Shown piece by piece: positions 19,307 through 37,400 of a DNA stretch of 64,000 nt. A program made the position numbers and the translations under genes. The DNA comes from Laetmonice hystrix (Eukaryota): positions 25,606,001 to 25,670,000 of the forward strand of contig OZ249440.1 of the NCBI GenBank assembly GCA_965235115.1, given 5' to 3'. The notes below the pieces were generated by a model, which was not told the DNA's origin, did no database searches, and saw only the letters and a list, made by a program, of their open reading frames with translations. Within the stretch, counting starts at the first letter, position 1; each line of letters starts with the position of its first letter.

Positions 19307-19468
19307 CTCCAGCAGCTCGTGGTGGGCGGCGAGCTGCCGTGTTGCCGGGACGAGGCGACCACACTGGCCGGTATCCAGCTTCACCTGGACGACACGTGGC
19401 CGGAGGACGAGGGCGAGAGTGGCCACACCGACGACAATGACGAACCGGAACGGGACACTCTCCTCAAG
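19307..19468 (+). CDS. Exon, FERM central lobe ([27 protein letters not shown]...)
   Basis: tttcag| ... AAG|GTCTGT; matches FERM F2 pattern Q..ilsG.lpC..e.a..LA.lql. Confidence 0.85.
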
Positions 19469-22400
19469 GTCTGTATCCGGTTACGTCACGAGTTACGTCA
19501 CGAGTACGTCACAGCCTTCCTCCTCCTAACCTCCTCCTCCTCCTCCTCCCCCTCCTCCTCCTGGCATCATACGGTTAACACCATGTGGTATACACAGAAA
19601 TATTCCATCGCCAACATTGAATAAAAACGTAGTATAGAGAATGTAGCTGTGGCGGCCAGGCGTGTCAAAGTTCATGTTGTCCATATAGCCGTCTGTCCCT
19701 ACTTCCACACAGGCATGGATCTCGTCTGTCTGTTCGTCTGCACCTTTCCAGGTAGGTAGCCTATCCTCTATGTGCAGTCCACCGTCCCTTCATTTCATGC
19801 CTGTCAGATTTCATGCCTGTCAGATTTCATGCCTGTCAGATTTCATGCCTGTCAGATTTCATGCCTGTCAGATTTCATGCCTGTCATATTTCATGCCTGT
19901 GTGTCTGCAAGCTTTGAGTGGTGTGGAACACAATCTTGTGTGATAGGCTTCGTCTGCACCTCTCGCCAGAAGTTTAGCATGGGTAGATGGGACCATAGCA
20001 GGCAAGGTATGCACGACTCGGGAATGTGCCGTACGTTTGGACCGTTGTTGGTATTTACCAGGCTATAGATACTACAGAGGCTTGAAATTATGTTGTAAAA
20101 GATCATTCCTTTGACGTTAAGATGCTTTGCTTTCTGCAGAAATTAATTTTATTAGCAAAATCTGAAGTTAAACATTCTCTTTATAGCGATGTAGTGAGTT
20201 ATAGAGAGGTTGACTGACATCTAATACTTCCTTTAACTCAATGGAATTAATTTGCTGAATTGTTTGTGATAACTTAAGAAACCTATTTCAACTAACAAAT
20301 CCTTTTTCTTTTACTTCTTTCTTACTGACCCTCGTCAGTCTTTATTCTTCATCCCATGTCAGTTGAATAGTTGACATAATTGTAGAGTTCTGTAAGTGTA
20401 GTAAATAGTAATGAGAGAAAGTAATTTAATAACACAAATAAAGTGTGGAGATTATTAGAAATTGACAGTAAATAATTTATATCCAGATATCTTGTCTTTC
20501 CTTTTTTTCCTTCTCTTCCATTTATTATCAAAACACCTTTGCCTTTTTACAAAGACTTTACTTTCTATTTCCCAGCTGTGCATATAAAGTACCTACATTT
20601 GTCAGACACACTCGGAGCTAATCCTGAGGAAAATTAACATTTTAATTATCAACCTGATAAGGATGCCCGTCTTACAGTTTCACGGTATCAAGACTTGCTA
20701 TAATCAGAGATGCGGGCAAGGAAGAGTTTAATAATCGGTTCGCACATTAACTATGTTAGCATCCTATGTCATCCATTGTTGGTTTCTCCGTATACCAAGC
20801 TAGACATAAAGAAAAACTTTTTCTAAGAAGTTTCAATGAAGTTTGTTTCGATAGTTGCTTTTTATTAAACGTACGCTCTGAAAACACTGAGCCATTCGGT
20901 CAAAGGCGTGGATGAATTAAGAGACCTGGTGCATTTGTTTTGTAATTTATTTAGAAGAACTAAGCGTATAAGACTGAAAGAAATGTGGACACAGATGTTG
21001 TTTCGCAGTGCTGTAGAAAAAGGGAAGCCGACATTTTGATTGCAAAGCTTGTGTTTACCTTTACGCGTGGACAACACCATCGGCAGTGTAGACGTGCTAG
21101 TTTTATGCACTCGCAATCAGAAAATCTACTGTAATTAGGAATACTTGTATGTATGTAGACAATCAACATGACATCCTGTGTCATAAATAACCCCTCATAT
21201 ACTGGCAGTATACTCAAAGTATTGTTAACTGAGCGCCTGGCCCGCTGTTGATTTCTATACAAATTAACGATCATAACCAGTGGTGTATAGTAACGTGTAA
21301 CTGGCTAATGGGTTGGGTATCTATGCTATAGTAACGTGTAACTGGGTAATGGGCCGGGTATCTGTGCTATAGTAACGTGTAACTGGGTAATGGGCCGGGT
21401 ATCTATGCTATAGTAACGTGTAACTGGGTAATGGGCCGGGTATCTATGCTATAGTAACGTGTAACTGGGAAATGGGCCGGGTATCTGTGCTATAGTAACG
21501 TGTAACTGGGTAATGGGCCGGGTATCTATGCTATAGTAACGTGTAACTGGGTAATGGGCCGGGTATCTATGCTATAGTAACGTGTAACTGGGTAATGGGC
21601 CGGGTATCTGTGCTATAGTAACGTGTAGCTGGGTAATGGACCGGGTATCTGTGCTATAGTAACGTGTGACTGGGTAATGGGCCGGGTATCTATGCTATAG
21701 TAACGTGTAACTGGGTAATGGGCCGGGTATCTATGCTATAGTAACGTGTAACTGGGTAATGGGCCGGGTATCTATGCTATAGTAACGTGTAACTGGGTAA
21801 TGGGCCGGGTATCTATGCTATAGTAACGTGTAACTGGGTAATGGGCCGGGTATCTATGATATAGTAACGTGTAACTGGGTAATGGGCCGGGTATCTATGC
21901 TATAGTAACGTGTAACTGGGTAATGGGCCGGGTATCTATGCTATAGTAACGTGTAACTGGGTAATGGGCCGGGTATCTATGATATAGTAACGTGTAACTG
22001 GGTAATGGGCCGGGTATCTATGCTATAGTAACGTGTAACTGGGTAATGGGCCGGGTATCTATGATATAGTAACGTGTAACTGGGTAATGGGCTTATGGTT
22101 GGCCGATAGAGTCATACCGCCTAAACATTAACGCGTAACGTAAATAATAACGCGTAAAAGTATCATCTTTCACGCGTGACTACAGCAACCAATCAAATAA
22201 GTGGAAACGTTTACGCGTAAAGAAATCAACCAATTGAAAGCCACACTCTATTTACGCGTGAACAATTCACCGGATATAACGCGTTATTTTTGTAAACCAA
22301 TGAAATCCTCTCTTACAAAGACACCACGACTGTAACGCATGCGTAAACGCCGTCAAGCTTTTCACAGGAACCACCCACCCCCCCTGGGTTAGAGTTAAGG

Positions 22401-34400: not shown

Positions 34401-37400
34401 TTTCCTATAGGCCTACTTAGGTCCGACCGGTGATTTCCAAATTCATTCAAAGAGGGGCAAGGAAAGAAAAACTGCAAGGAAAAAGGAAAGGGCTTTCAGG
34501 CTCCCAACAACACTCCTGTAGTCCCTCCCGCAGGTGCTACTGCATGGATATCATTAAATATAAACATATAAGGCGCGCCAAATAATGACAATATGCGCCA
34601 CCTGGTGACATCCCCAGTAATCCTGTATCTGAGATTCACATAATGTACCAAGTAGAAACTCCTAGAAGCAAAGATTAAACTAGGATAAAAACCACGTATA
34701 TTGATACTTTCTAAATTCATGAACAAAGCAAAGTCTAATTGGATTATGTGATCTGATGTTCCTGACGATAGTATTCTCCCAATACGTGTACGATGTACAA
34801 CTTATATAAACATCTCCTTCTAACTTCCGATTACTGTAGATTTCTGCCGACGTCTCCACAACATGGTCCACACGGAACTAGAAACGAGTCAAGTGTACTC
34901 GGCCGAGCTGGAGACCCTTCACAAACTGCTGCCCTTTCCTGAGGAGGCCGCCCTTCGGCTTACAAACATCGAGTACAATCTCTTCAACAGTGTGCCGGCT
35001 ATGTACTACATCCGGCACGTCACGGTCGACTTGACACGGAGTGCGACGTCCATCCGTCATCCCAATGTACAGGACCTCATTCAAAGGTTTAACGAGGTAG
35101 GTGTACGTCAGAGGTTGGATGGGATGGTTTCTCTCACGATAAGCGCCTGTACTTGATTCATGAAATGTGTCGTCTGCATGGCTTGTGTATGCGCCATAGT
35201 ACGGAGCCCTGTTGAGGACAGGAAGAGAAAACATTTTGTGGTGATCTCGAAATTACCACATAGTGACGTCATTAAGTCGTAATAACGAGTTAATGACGTC
35301 ACTAAGATATTAGTGGTAATTTCGAGATCACCACAAAATTTCTTCTCTGAAACGAACGCAATTAACTCGTAATAACGACTTGGTGACATATTTAAGTCGT
35401 AATAACGAGTTAATGACATTACTAAGTGGTAATTTCGAGATCACCACAAAATTTTTCTCTGAAACGAACGCGATTAACTCGTAATAACGACTTAGTGACG
35501 TCATTAAGTCGTAATAACGAGTTAATGACGTCACTAAGTGGTTATTTCGAGATCACCACAAATGTTTTTCTCTTCATGTCCCCAACAAGGCTCCGTACCA
35601 TAGTTATAACGCATGTCGTAATTTCCGACATTCGCGAATTTGAATTCGTGATGACTGATGGGAATCGAAAAAAATAAAATAGTTTAGTACCTAATATATT
35701 GGTCAGGCATTGTTGTGGACGTTGGTCCACAACCAGACAGTAATTCATGGTAACTTAAACCCCACGAAATTTGGTCGGAAGTAAAGATCTATCATTATCC
35801 CTATCCCTGACCTTAACCCTAACCCCTAACACCGGTCCATAGACCTCACAAAAACATATCCCTATCCCTGACCTTAACCCTAACCCCTAACACCGGTCCC
35901 TAGACCTCCCAAAAACATATCCCTATCCCTGACCTTAACCCTAACACCGGTCCATAGACCTCACTAAAACATATCCCTATCCCTGACCTTATCCCTAACC
36001 CCTAACACCGGTCCATAGACCTCACAAAAACATATCCCTATCCCTGACCTTAACCCTAACCTCTAACACCAGTCCATAGACCTCACAAAAACATATCCCT
36101 ATCCCTGACCTTAACCCTAACCCCTAACACCGGTCCATAGACCTCACAAAAACATATCCCTATCCCTGACCTTAACCCTAACCCCTAACACCGGTCCATA
36201 GACCTCACAAAAACATATCCCTATCCCTGACCTTATCCCTAACCCCTAACACCGGTCCATAGACCTCACAAAAACATATCCCTATCCCTGACCTTAACCC
36301 TAACCCCTAACACCGGTCCATAGACCTCACAAAAACATATCCCTATCCCTATCCCTGACCTTAACCCTAACCCCTAACACCGGTCCATAGACCTCACAAA
36401 AACATATCCCTATCCCTGACCTTAACCCCTAACACCGGTCCATAGACCTCACAAAAACATATCCCTACCCCTGACCTTAACCCTAACCCCTAACACCGGT
36501 CCCTAGACCTCACAAAAACATATCCCTACCCCTGACCTTAACCCTAACCCCTAACACCGGTCCCTAAACCTCACAAAAACATATCCCTATCCCTGACCTT
36601 AACCCTAACCCCTAACACCGGTCCATAGACCTTACAAAAACATATCCCTATCCCTGACCTTAACCCTAACCCCTAACACCGGTCCATAGACCTCACAAAA
36701 ACATATCCCTATCCCTGACCTTAATCCTAACCCCTACCCACAAATTTCGCGGGGAAGTTACCATGAATTAACAACCGACCAGAGAGATTTCAATAACCGG
36801 GATGTATTGTGTTACCTCAGGTGAGTTCGTGGGTGACACACATCATAATCACCCAGGCCACACACGAGGACCGTAAGGCTGTTCTCTCCTGTATCTTACG
36901 GCTGGCAGAGTCGTGCTGGAGTCTCGGTAACTTCAACACCACCGTCGAGATTCTCACCGGCCTCAAGTGAGTCTTCAGTGTCACACCGGCATCGGGTTGT
37001 AGGAAAAATATAAGATGGCACGATATTTGGACTTTAAAATTGCTTAATGGCCTACGATTGGATCGAAAGTCAGAAACTCTAAATGTTTTCAATTTGAAGA
37101 TTTTATGGATTAGAAACTGGGGCTAGAGTGCCTTACAGTAGAATGTTTCATCTCTGGCAGTGTTTGAAGAGTTGAGTCAGAATGAATGTTAAAGTAACCC
37201 TATAAAAATTATTCTTTAAAAAATATCGGTTGTTCTATTAGGTTTAAGATGAAAGCCAACACCAGGGCCCAATTTTTCAAAAATTCTCAACTTGAGTAAA
37301 GCTTACTTAAGCAAACTAACAGGCTTCTGATTGGCTGGCTCAAGTTGAGAATTTTTGAAAGACTAGTGCCCGATTTCTCGAACATACTTAAGTATACTTA

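What the first reader, a model, noticed from the sequence alone, without database searches (positions are those of the whole stretch)
19307..35096. PLC-epsilon with an in-frame N-terminal FERM domain
Seen: exons 19307, 25644, 30818 and 34081 encode FERM F2 and F3 lobes ([26 protein letters not shown]...W). The last ends in phase 1 and joins the phase-1 RasGEF exon at 34840 across a 473-bp intron with no stop. Established: vertebrate PLCE1 is described as RasGEF-PH-EF-X-Y-C2-RA-RA without a FERM domain. Inference: a FERM-RasGEF-PLC protein could be recruited to membranes or receptor tails via FERM; I do not know of a description of this architecture, but I cannot search.
Basis: partly seen in the sequence, partly recalled or inferred. 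Interest (0 to 1): 0.8.

Follow-up and report, generated by a model that had tools for sequence, protein, structure and literature searches.

The report
Long PLC-epsilon with talin-like half-FERM
The exons are real and encode two FERM lobes inside a very long invertebrate phospholipase C-epsilon gene, but this architecture is already annotated in dozens of invertebrates and was reported for the long C. elegans PLC-1 isoform in 2022, so it is an ordinary orthologue.

Summary
Exons at 19307, 25644, 30818 and 34081 encode FERM lobes F2 and F3. The last exon ends in phase 1 at 34366 and joins the first RasGEF exon at 34840 with no stop. No RNA run for this species was found. The join rests on four things: fit to the snail orthologue (one residue off), continuous alignments in over 40 orthologues, the same phase-1 split Asp codon in a related species' genome, and purifying selection.

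The claim of novelty does not hold. PLC-epsilon-like proteins with ankyrin repeats, FERM_M, RasGEF, PLC-X/Y, C2 and RA domains are annotated in arthropods, molluscs, an annelid, a nemertean, rotifers, nematodes, hemichordates and echinoderms. Tomioka et al. 2022 (PMC8752840) reported a FERM domain in the long C. elegans PLC-1 isoform and proposed membrane or PIP2 targeting.

- The module is not N-terminal. The gene runs from about 159 kb upstream of the window to about 5 kb beyond its end.
- Only F2 and F3 were found, closest to the talin head. No F1 lobe was found.
- The second exon most likely ends at 25868.
- Vertebrate PLCE1 shows no trace of the module in three tests.

Verdict: a new member of a known kind, low interest.

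The parts
19307..19468 (+). Exon encoding the first long helix of FERM lobe F2 ([25 protein letters not shown]...) and the start of a variable acidic insert. It is phase 0 at both ends.
   Evidence: Sequence read. tblastn to snail, spider, annelid, nemertean and C. elegans orthologues gives 40-67% identity. The segment aligns to the talin-1 F2 stretch 'LYVQARDDILNGSHPVSFDKACEFAGFQCQIQ' in the profile search.
25644..25868 (+). Exon encoding the variable F2 insert and the conserved CLPP..K-rich element of F2. The 3' end was revised to 25868 (GAT|GTAAGT); an earlier GT at 25749 is also in frame.
   Evidence: Sequence read. The longer exon adds 36 bits on the family profile. The annelid Owenia HSP covers 25671-25865 at 44% identity. 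The CLPP motif aligns to talin FLPKEY.
30818..30967 (+). Exon encoding the last F2 helices ([14 protein letters not shown]) and the first strand and basic loop of F3.
   Evidence: Sequence read. Pfam FERM_M profile positions 90-112, E 0.008. Identity to lophotrochozoan orthologues is 62-76%.
33382..34121 (.). A 124-bp tandem array of 6 copies. It duplicates the acceptor and the first 41 nt of the F3 exon five times in the upstream intron.
   Evidence: Word depth in DNA contigs over parts of the array is about 4-6 times that of the flanks.
34081..34366 (+). Exon encoding almost the whole F3 (PTB/PH-like) lobe. It ends in phase 1.
   Evidence: Sequence read. phmmer finds 64 hits, best E 3.7e-37. 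The profile hits talin F3. A related species has the same exon with the same phase-1 end. dN is 0.21 with dS saturated.
34840..35096 (+). First RasGEF (CDC25) exon. It enters in phase 1 and completes an Asp codon.
   Evidence: Sequence read. Pfam RasGEF profile positions 2-48. The next exon continues at positions 49-96. The acceptor position and phase are the same in the related species.
36821..38997 (+). Remaining RasGEF exons, at about 36821-36960, 37487-37797 and 38824-38997. Some boundaries are approximate.
   Evidence: Pfam RasGEF positions 49-96 and 101-170. Collinear tblastn hits and junction search.
39463..43135 (+). PH-like exon (about 39463-40235), linker exon (about 41460-41932) and first EF-hand-like exon (42924-43135).
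   Evidence: Pfam PH_12, weak. Collinear tblastn hits.
45197..47908 (+). EF-hand-like end and the PI-PLC X-box exons, at 45197-45319, 45432-45536, 46076-46183, 47066-47182 and 47699-47908.
   Evidence: Pfam PI-PLC-X at E 9e-13 and 1e-15, EF-hand_like weak. Junction search.
50046..54698 (+). PI-PLC Y-box exons (about 50046-52928), the C2 exon (53317-53580) and the following exon (about 54399-54698).
   Evidence: Pfam PI-PLC-Y E 5e-7 and C2 E 3e-10. tblastn.
55772..59248 (+). A 1,159-codon open frame on the gene strand between the C2 and RA1 exons. It is low-complexity and no match was found. It is probably a large lineage-specific disordered exon; its inclusion in the mRNA is not shown.
59619..63134 (+). 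RA1 exons at 59619-59741, 60320-60514 and about 63078-63110. RA2 lies beyond the window, at about +65.5 kb and +69.1 kb.
   Evidence: Pfam RA E 1.4e-6. tblastn.

Best explanation
The four exons encode a talin-like FERM F2-F3 pair inside one very large PLC-epsilon gene on the + strand. The gene is the orthologue of the long C. elegans isoform PLC-1(L). Its order is: ankyrin repeats, a conserved helical block, a large disordered exon ending in REM-like helices, F2-F3, CDC25/RasGEF, PH, EF, X, Y, C2, RA1, RA2. It spans roughly window coordinate -158.8 kb to +69.3 kb. The F3 exon is spliced in phase 1 directly to the first RasGEF exon. What is shown: the fold and family of the module, the collinearity with orthologues, the conserved splice phase and the purifying selection. 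What is inferred: the F2-F3 pair acts as a membrane or receptor-tail targeting device, as it does in talin. On this view the basic F2 patch and the basic F3 loop bind PI(4,5)P2-rich membrane, and the F3 groove with its invariant Trp may bind a peptide tail. That would place the Rap/Ras-GEF and lipase domains on their substrate membrane. Shorter isoforms without the module probably coexist, as they do in C. elegans.
For: FERM identity:
- Pfam FERM_M scores above its gathering cut-off in orthologues (47.2, 39.7 and 31.2 bits against 23.8).
- The family profile A2 hits talin-1/2 F2-F3 in the PDB at E 2.4e-13, with motif-level agreement.
- The AlphaFold2 model of the spider orthologue's module has pLDDT 89.3 and pTM 0.78.
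- Foldseek puts talin F2-F3 on top (E 1e-11, TM by target 0.72-0.77), followed by kindlin, KRIT1 and merlin/ERM.

One gene:
- Snail, spider, tick and nematode proteins are collinear with the exons, from -61 kb through the window to +69 kb.
- The ankyrin exon lies at -158.8 kb on the same strand.
- In more than 40 orthologues, F2b-F3-CDC25 forms one continuous BLAST alignment.
- The junction 34366>34840 leaves a length difference of one residue against the snail protein.
- Pfam RasGEF positions run 2-48, 49-96 and 101-170 over consecutive exons.
- A related species' contig has the same G|AT split Asp codon between its F3 and RasGEF exons, across a 244-bp intron. Only exons give nucleotide hits between the two species.
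- dN is 0.21 for the F3 exon and 0.16-0.27 for the RasGEF exons, with dS saturated or above 2.
- All four exonic variants seen in DNA contigs are synonymous third-position changes.

Precedent:
- PLC-1(L) of C. elegans carries a FERM domain (PMC8752840).
- The profile hits the 3,487-residue C. elegans protein at E 7.7e-118.
Against: - No RNA run for this species was found, so no read spans 34366>34840. The three runs laid on the stretch are DNA and show no joints.
- About 20 residues present in orthologues between the upstream large exon and exon 19307 were not found in the 39-kb intron. The model may miss a micro-exon there.
- No F1 lobe was found, so the module is not a canonical three-lobed FERM.
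- Some annotations split the gene. Schistocerca models break inside F2, and Steinernema has predicted isoforms that end just after F3.
- The targeting function rests on analogy with talin and on the 2022 authors' proposal. It has not been measured.
Confidence: 0.85

Rival explanations
1. Two transcription units. The ankyrin-FERM exons make a separate protein that ends after exon 34081-34366, and PLC-epsilon starts from a promoter downstream. On this view the in-frame join is never used.
For: C. elegans makes short PLC-1(S) isoforms without the FERM region. Steinernema has predicted 1,709- and 1,741-residue isoforms that end just after F3. Schistocerca is annotated as two gene models. Reading through the donor at 34366 meets a stop after four codons. 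No RNA run for this species was found.
Against: The phase-1 split Asp codon is conserved in a second species. F3 and CDC25 lie in one continuous alignment in more than 40 orthologues, many of them RefSeq models. A PLC-1(L) expression construct restored behaviour in the C. elegans mutant. The Schistocerca split falls inside F2, which points to an annotation break. Such isoforms may exist alongside the long one, but exclusive separation is unlikely.
Confidence: 0.05
2. A canonical three-lobed FERM, with the F1 lobe encoded by exons that were missed in the 39-kb intron upstream of 19307.
For: About 20 residues seen in orthologues are unaccounted for in this species. The Pfam FERM_M match starts at profile position 6-20 in orthologues.
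Against: In the snail orthologue only 24 residues separate the preceding exon from F2. No Pfam FERM_N match appeared in the 15 full-length orthologues and fragments scanned. The spider model shows only helices and disorder before F2, with no beta-grasp fold. All Foldseek alignments start at F2.
Confidence: 0.07
3. Chance open frames or decayed pseudo-exons in an intron, with no coding role.
For: Single-exon Pfam scores are below the gathering cut-offs. The region is full of minisatellites.
Against: phmmer gives E 3.7e-37 for one exon. Identity to orthologues is 40-76%. dN is far below dS. Splice sites are conserved. The spliced frame has no stops.
Confidence: 0.01

Closest known systems
C. elegans PLC-1(L), the long isoform of PLC-epsilon (Tomioka, Jang & Iino 2022, PMC8752840; 3,487-residue protein P0168)
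   Same: The Pfam content matches: ankyrin repeats, FERM_M, RasGEF, EF-like, X, Y and C2 (RA is not among P0168's precomputed families). The FERM lies in the region specific to the long isoform. The family profile hits it at E 7.7e-118, and its FERM region aligns to window exons at 39-45% identity. The authors proposed the same membrane/PIP2-targeting idea.
   Different: It is a different phylum, and the variable inserts differ in length. Here no transcript evidence was found and no function has been tested. The paper calls it a FERM domain from Pfam alone and does not discuss the missing F1 lobe or the likeness to talin.
Vertebrate PLCE1 (RasGEF-PH-EF-X-Y-C2-RA-RA, about 2,150-2,350 residues)
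   Same: It is orthologous from the CDC25 domain onwards. The catalytic region is 44-48% identical to the snail orthologue, and a fish PLCE1 aligns to the window's downstream exons.
   Different: No F2-F3 was detected. hmmsearch found no significant hit in 16 species (best E 0.85). hhalign against the pre-CDC25 region gave a probability of 0.56%. No precomputed FERM_M or ankyrin family is listed for these proteins. No PLCE1 appears in the top 30 Swiss-Prot fold matches. The 415-527 residues before CDC25 appear unrelated.
Talin head F2-F3 (for example PDB 3g9w, 1mk7, 6mfs)
   Same: It is the best match by both sequence profile and fold. Shared motifs include RLLGI, KTK and the Trp aligned to the talin KRW motif. 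Also shared are a basic stretch after the (F/C)LP..Y element of F2 and a basic F3 loop.
   Different: Identity is about 21%. There are no F0 or F1 lobes and no talin rod. The module sits between REM-like helices and a CDC25 domain. F2 carries a long variable insert. Integrin or PIP2 binding has not been tested.
KRIT1/CCM1 (ankyrin repeats plus FERM, a Rap1 effector)
   Same: It combines ankyrin repeats and a FERM in a Rap-pathway protein. Its F2-F3 fold matches at E 5e-10. There is a weak Pfam hit to KRIT1_FRMD8_FERM_C.
   Different: In KRIT1 the ankyrin repeats directly abut a three-lobed FERM whose F1 binds Rap1. Here the ankyrin repeats are more than 1,000 residues away and no F1 was found. 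Identity is 16-18%, lower than to talin.
Epac2 and PDZ-GEF type RasGEFs, which carry a domain inserted between REM and CDC25
   Same: If the helices before F2 are the end of a REM domain, F2-F3 would be an insert between REM and CDC25. By my recollection of the literature, the RA domain of Epac2 sits in that position. The CDC25 fold of the spider orthologue matches RasGRP2, Epac2 and SOS at Z 15-16.6.
   Different: The REM assignment is weak. SOS1 REM matches at E 0.2 only, Pfam RasGEF_N gives nothing, and a profile of the N-terminal half finds nothing in the PDB.

Membership tests
FERM domain (band 4.1 superfamily) | F2 lobe: an acyl-CoA-binding-protein-like helical bundle (Pfam FERM_M) | tested here: met
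   FERM_M scores above its gathering cut-off in orthologues (47.2, 39.7, 38.3 and 31.2 bits against 23.8). Window exon 30818 alone scores 17 bits. The model shows a helical bundle that aligns to talin F2.
FERM domain (band 4.1 superfamily) | F3 lobe: a PTB/PH-like beta sandwich with a C-terminal helix | tested here: met
   The model has seven strands and a capping helix, with pLDDT 86-98 over the F3 blocks. Profile A2 hits talin F3 at E 2.4e-13. Foldseek TM by target is 0.72-0.77 against talin F2-F3 crystal structures. Pfam gives only weak IRS and KRIT1 FERM_C hits on the window exon.
FERM domain (band 4.1 superfamily) | F1 lobe: a ubiquitin-like fold that completes the three-lobed cloverleaf | tested here: not met
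   No FERM_N match in any orthologue scanned. Only helices and disorder precede F2 in both models. Only 24 residues separate the previous exon from F2 in the snail orthologue. The module is therefore filed as an F2-F3 half-FERM.
FERM domain (band 4.1 superfamily) | Binding of phosphoinositide membrane and/or receptor cytoplasmic tails | not testable with these tools
   Only conservation of basic stretches and of the Trp aligned to the talin KRW motif was seen.
PLC-epsilon (PLCE1 / PLC-1) | A CDC25-type RasGEF domain N-terminal to the PLC core | tested here: met
   Pfam RasGEF positions 2-48, 49-96 and 101-170 fall on consecutive window exons. The CDC25 fold in the orthologue model matches at Z 15-16.6.
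PLC-epsilon (PLCE1 / PLC-1) | PH, EF-hand-like, X box, Y box and C2 core | tested here: met
   PI-PLC-X at E 9e-13 and 1e-15, PI-PLC-Y 5e-7, C2 3e-10, with weak PH_12 and EF-hand_like hits, all on window exons.
PLC-epsilon (PLCE1 / PLC-1) | Two C-terminal RA domains | tested here: met
   RA1 lies at 59619-60514 (Pfam RA E 1.4e-6). A second RA-like set of exons lies at +65.5 and +69.1 kb, outside the window.
Long ankyrin-FERM PLC-epsilon, PLC-1(L) type | Ankyrin repeats and a FERM module encoded upstream of CDC25 in the same gene | tested here: met
   Upstream exons at -61, -36, -29.6, -22.5 and -21.4 kb are collinear with orthologues. A 743-codon open frame at -158.8 kb matches the ankyrin-bearing N-terminal 500 residues of the nemertean orthologue at E 3e-42. 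Being on one transcript is inferred, not seen.
Talin | F0-F1-F2-F3 head followed by a helical-bundle rod | tested here: not met
   Only F2-F3 resemble talin, at about 21% identity. The rest of the protein is PLC-epsilon. It may work like a talin head, but it is not a talin.

The most novel reading that the evidence does not exclude
The FERM of long PLC-epsilon is an F1-less, talin-type F2-F3 cassette wedged between REM-like helices and the CDC25 domain. It was present in the bilaterian ancestor and was lost in vertebrates and in several insect lineages. It binds PI(4,5)P2 and/or NPxY-type receptor tails such as integrin beta, and so couples adhesion or receptor sites directly to Rap activation and PIP2 hydrolysis. 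The structural and phylogenetic parts are well supported here, and I found no paper that states them. The binding part is speculation.
Probability: 0.2. Interest if true: 0.5.

Novelty: new member of a known kind. Interest (0 to 1): 0.22.

Why it matters
Textbook descriptions of PLC-epsilon come from mammals and start at the CDC25 domain. How the enzyme finds membranes is still called obscure (PMC8752840). Most invertebrate lineages sampled here, including hemichordates and echinoderms, keep a much longer form with ankyrin repeats and a talin-like F2-F3 pair directly before the GEF domain. That suggests an ancestral targeting mechanism that vertebrates lost or replaced. This is useful context for work on PLC-1(L) in C. 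elegans. It does not make this window special: it holds one more orthologue of an architecture already in the databases and noted in print.

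Tried and rejected
- RNA evidence: two searches for sequencing runs found only three runs from one sample. Laid on 33300-35200, they behave as DNA: the intron is contiguous and there are no joints. The join could not be tested directly.
- Missing linker: a regular-expression scan and a small profile search of the 39-kb intron upstream of 19307 found no micro-exon for the roughly 20-residue linker seen in orthologues.
- REM domain: Pfam RasGEF_N found nothing in window exons or orthologue segments. A profile of the N-terminal REM-like half found nothing in the PDB. 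A structural second look at the large model reported only the CDC25 part. Only a weak SOS1 REM hit at E 0.2 remains, so REM is kept as a tentative note.
- First upstream search: a search of the genome with the partial Biomphalaria protein (residues 1-440) found nothing. The nemertean N-terminus later worked.
- KRIT1 reading: I considered a KRIT1-like reading because of the ankyrin repeats, the FERM and the Rap link. Talin is closer by both sequence and fold, and the Rap-binding F1 lobe was not found.
- Earlier paper: Kunitomo et al. 2013, cited by PMC8752840 for the long and short isoforms and the pe1238 mutant, is not held in the library.
- Complex prediction: none was run, because no specific binding claim is made.

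Full report
**1. Observation**

- Exon 19307-19468 follows a cag acceptor and ends before a gt donor. It encodes [25 protein letters not shown]...
- An exon starts at 25644.
- Exon 30818-30967 contains NLPAYGC.
- Exon 34081-34366 contains [13 protein letters not shown]...EW and ends G|gtaagt in phase 1.
- The intron 34367-34839 is 473 bp, as stated.
- Exon 34840-35096 completes a GAT codon and continues into a RasGEF-like sequence.

The spliced frame is open throughout. A junction search that knew only the tblastn hits of a snail orthologue chose 30967>34081, 34366>34840 and 35096>36821. The length differences against the snail protein were 0, +1 and 0 residues. Single-exon Pfam scores are weak. 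Exon 34081-34365 alone finds 64 proteins among 1.8 billion representatives, with a best E of 3.7e-37.

**2. What the downstream gene is**

Window exons give these Pfam matches:
- RasGEF positions 49-96 and 101-170, following positions 2-48 in exon 34840
- a weak PH match
- EF-hand-like
- PI-PLC-X (E 9e-13 and 1e-15)
- PI-PLC-Y
- C2
- RA

A second RA-like set of exons lies beyond the window end. This is a PLC-epsilon gene on the + strand.

**3. The FERM exons belong to the same gene in many animals**

The long proteins found with the F3 exon carry ankyrin repeats, FERM_M, RasGEF, EF-like, X, Y, C2 and RA domains in one chain. They include spider, tick, nematode and snail proteins, several named PLC epsilon-1 by RefSeq.

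Three word-seeded searches widen the picture. PLC-epsilon-like proteins with precomputed FERM_M, usually with ankyrin repeats, occur in:
- chelicerates, hemipterans, mayflies, a water flea, a myriapod (related crustacean and springtail proteins match the module by sequence without a precomputed FERM_M)
- bivalves and gastropods
- the annelid Owenia and the nemertean Lineus
- rotifers
- many nematodes, including C. elegans and Trichinella
- the hemichordates Saccoglossus and Glandiceps
- the echinoderms Patiria, Acanthaster and Lytechinus

Snail, spider, tick and nematode proteins are collinear with the window exons and with further exons upstream, at window coordinates -61.0, -36.1, -35.5, -29.6, -22.5 and -21.4 kb. 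The ankyrin-bearing first 500 residues of the nemertean orthologue match a 743-codon open frame at -158.8 kb on the same strand (E 3e-42).

The module is therefore not N-terminal. It sits about 1,700 residues into a protein of probably more than 3,500 residues, in a gene of roughly 228 kb.

**4. Evidence for the 34366>34840 join**

No RNA run for this species was found. The three runs available are DNA: their contigs run through the intron and show no joints. The join therefore rests on comparative evidence.
- In more than 40 orthologues the second half of F2, F3 and CDC25 form one uninterrupted BLAST alignment.
- A contig of a related species (assembly GCA_022702875.1) has the F3 exon at 69% amino-acid identity. 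It ends ...TTT G|gtaaac in phase 1. After a 244-bp intron comes an acceptor followed by ATTTC..., so the same Asp codon is split at the same place.
- Between the two species only exons give nucleotide matches.
- dN is 0.21 for the F3 exon against 0.27 and 0.16 for two RasGEF exons. dS is saturated or above 2.
- The four exonic variants seen in the DNA contigs are all third-position synonymous changes, by my reading of the codons.

**5. What kind of FERM**

Pfam FERM_M scores above its gathering cut-off in orthologues.

A profile of the module from 39 sequences (A2) hits talin-1 and talin-2 F2-F3 in the PDB at E 2.4e-13. The printed alignment pairs:
- the F2 start with the talin stretch LYVQARDDILNGSHPVSFDKACEFAGFQCQIQ
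- the CLPP.Y element with talin FLPKEY
- the basic loop and RLLGI with talin KGKNKLVPRLLGI
- a conserved Trp with the Trp of talin's KRW motif

An AlphaFold2 model of the spider orthologue's module is confident (pLDDT 89.3, pTM 0.78). Foldseek ranks talin F2-F3 first (E 1e-11, TM by target 0.72-0.77). Kindlin-3, KRIT1, merlin/ERM and myosin MyTH4-FERM follow. The Swiss-Prot search gives the same order.

No F1 lobe was found:
- No FERM_N hit in any orthologue scanned.
- Only helices and disorder before F2 in both models.
- Only 24 residues between the preceding exon and F2 in the snail orthologue.

The three helices before F2 resemble the end of a REM domain by motif (W...DL...FL). They give a weak SOS1 REM hit at E 0.2. 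Pfam and a second profile gave nothing, so this stays tentative.

**6. Refinement of the model**

My first reading ended the exon that starts at 25644 at 25748. The open frame continues to a consensus donor at 25868 (GAT|GTAAGT). The longer exon:
- adds 36 bits against the family profile
- is covered by an annelid HSP at 25671-25865
- contains the CLPP element that aligns with talin

About 20 residues present in orthologues between the large upstream exon (which ends at -19906 in phase 0) and exon 19307 were not found. A direct join is in frame, so either a micro-exon was missed or this species lacks the linker.

**7. Vertebrates**

The vertebrate PLCE1 proteins listed (about 2,150-2,350 residues) carry no precomputed FERM_M or ankyrin family.
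- The A2 profile found no significant hit in 16 vertebrates (best E 0.85). It hits C. elegans at 7.7e-118, Saccoglossus at 4.6e-63 and sea urchin at 1.9e-40.
- Profile-profile comparison with the vertebrate pre-CDC25 region gives a probability of 0.56%.
- No PLCE1 appears among the top 30 Swiss-Prot fold matches.
- Beetles, mosquitoes and a fly also gave no significant hit.

The simplest reading is that the module was present in the bilaterian ancestor and was lost several times. This is an inference from distribution; no tree was built.

**8. Comparison with what is known**

A literature search found Tomioka, Jang & Iino 2022 (Commun Biol 5:30, PMC8752840). [quoted passage not shown] It notes that FERM domains bind PIP2 and localise proteins to the plasma membrane. 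It proposes that Akt phosphorylation within the FERM domain may regulate membrane localisation of PLC-1.

[quoted passage not shown] It also reports that a PLC-1(L) construct restores the behaviour in the plc-1(pe1238) mutant, and that short isoforms without the region exist.

I found no paper that describes the talin likeness, the missing F1 lobe or the phylogenetic spread. These are increments, not a new kind of system.

**9. Mechanism**

Shown:
- a talin-like F2-F3 fold directly upstream of the CDC25 domain in one conserved coding unit
- basic stretches and a Trp aligned to talin's KRW motif (the Trp invariant in the 32-sequence alignment)

Inferred:
- membrane or peptide-tail targeting of the GEF and lipase domains
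- coexistence of shorter isoforms

Not testable with these tools: the ligands.

**10. Verdict**

- The gene is an ordinary orthologue of the long PLC-epsilon form.

Noticed in passing
window 33382-34121: A 124-bp tandem array of 6 copies at 96% identity. Its unit spans the intron-exon boundary of the F3 exon, so the intron holds five extra copies of the acceptor plus the first 41 nt of the exon. Using an upstream copy would run into a stop after 17 codons, unless the AAG|GTCGTA inside each copy acts as a donor. In that case each copy would be an in-frame 33-nt mini-exon. Word depth in DNA contigs over parts of the array is 4-6 times that of the flanks, so the array is real. No nucleotide similarity to the unit was seen in the related species' contig L024.
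   Followed up: partly
window 55772-59248 (+): A 1,159-codon open frame on the gene strand between the C2 and RA1 exons. It is rich in Ser, Glu and Lys, has no Pfam match and is not covered by any orthologue alignment. It is far too long to be open by chance. It is probably a lineage-specific disordered exon, but its use is not shown.
   Followed up: partly
upstream of the window: L010:4461-4726 and L009:405-650 (window coordinates -35540..-35274 and -29595..-29350): These are the most conserved exons found for the gene, at 64-87% identity to mollusc and nemertean orthologues. They lie between the ankyrin repeats and the FERM module. They have no Pfam domain apart from a faint ARMC5-like armadillo hint in the snail protein. 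This looks like an undescribed conserved helical domain of long PLC-epsilon.
   Followed up: partly
L009:7527-7679 and the large exon at window coordinates -21723..-19906: REM-like motifs flank a long disordered insert: SLEGLIAEII, then FFFHAVPLVVHPVIILRVL, then IEIWVNVCPPDL...MKDFLHKM. If this is a split REM domain, F2-F3 would be an insert between REM and CDC25. Support is weak (SOS1 REM E 0.2; no Pfam or PDB hit for the first half).
   Followed up: partly
window 34158, 34955, 34979, 34994: Variants seen in DNA contigs of the same sample. All four exonic ones are third-position synonymous changes, while the intron 34367-34839 carries substitutions and small indels.
   Followed up: yes
orthologues P0134/P0118 (Schistocerca) and P0052/P0076 (Steinernema): Public annotations break this gene in different ways. 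The locust models split it inside F2 into an 'uncharacterized' ankyrin protein and a 'PLCE1-like' protein. Steinernema has predicted isoforms that end just after F3. Many RefSeq 'PLCE1-like' models of about 2,000-2,200 residues start in mid-F2. These are either internal promoters or truncated predictions.
   Followed up: no
window 17011-18807, 21286-24562, 31398-32154: Large intronic minisatellites: a 24-bp unit in 74 copies, a 41-bp unit in 20 and 35 copies, and a 53-bp unit (also read as 163 bp) in 14 copies. They create long spurious open frames on both strands. No Rfam family matches anywhere in the window.
   Followed up: partly
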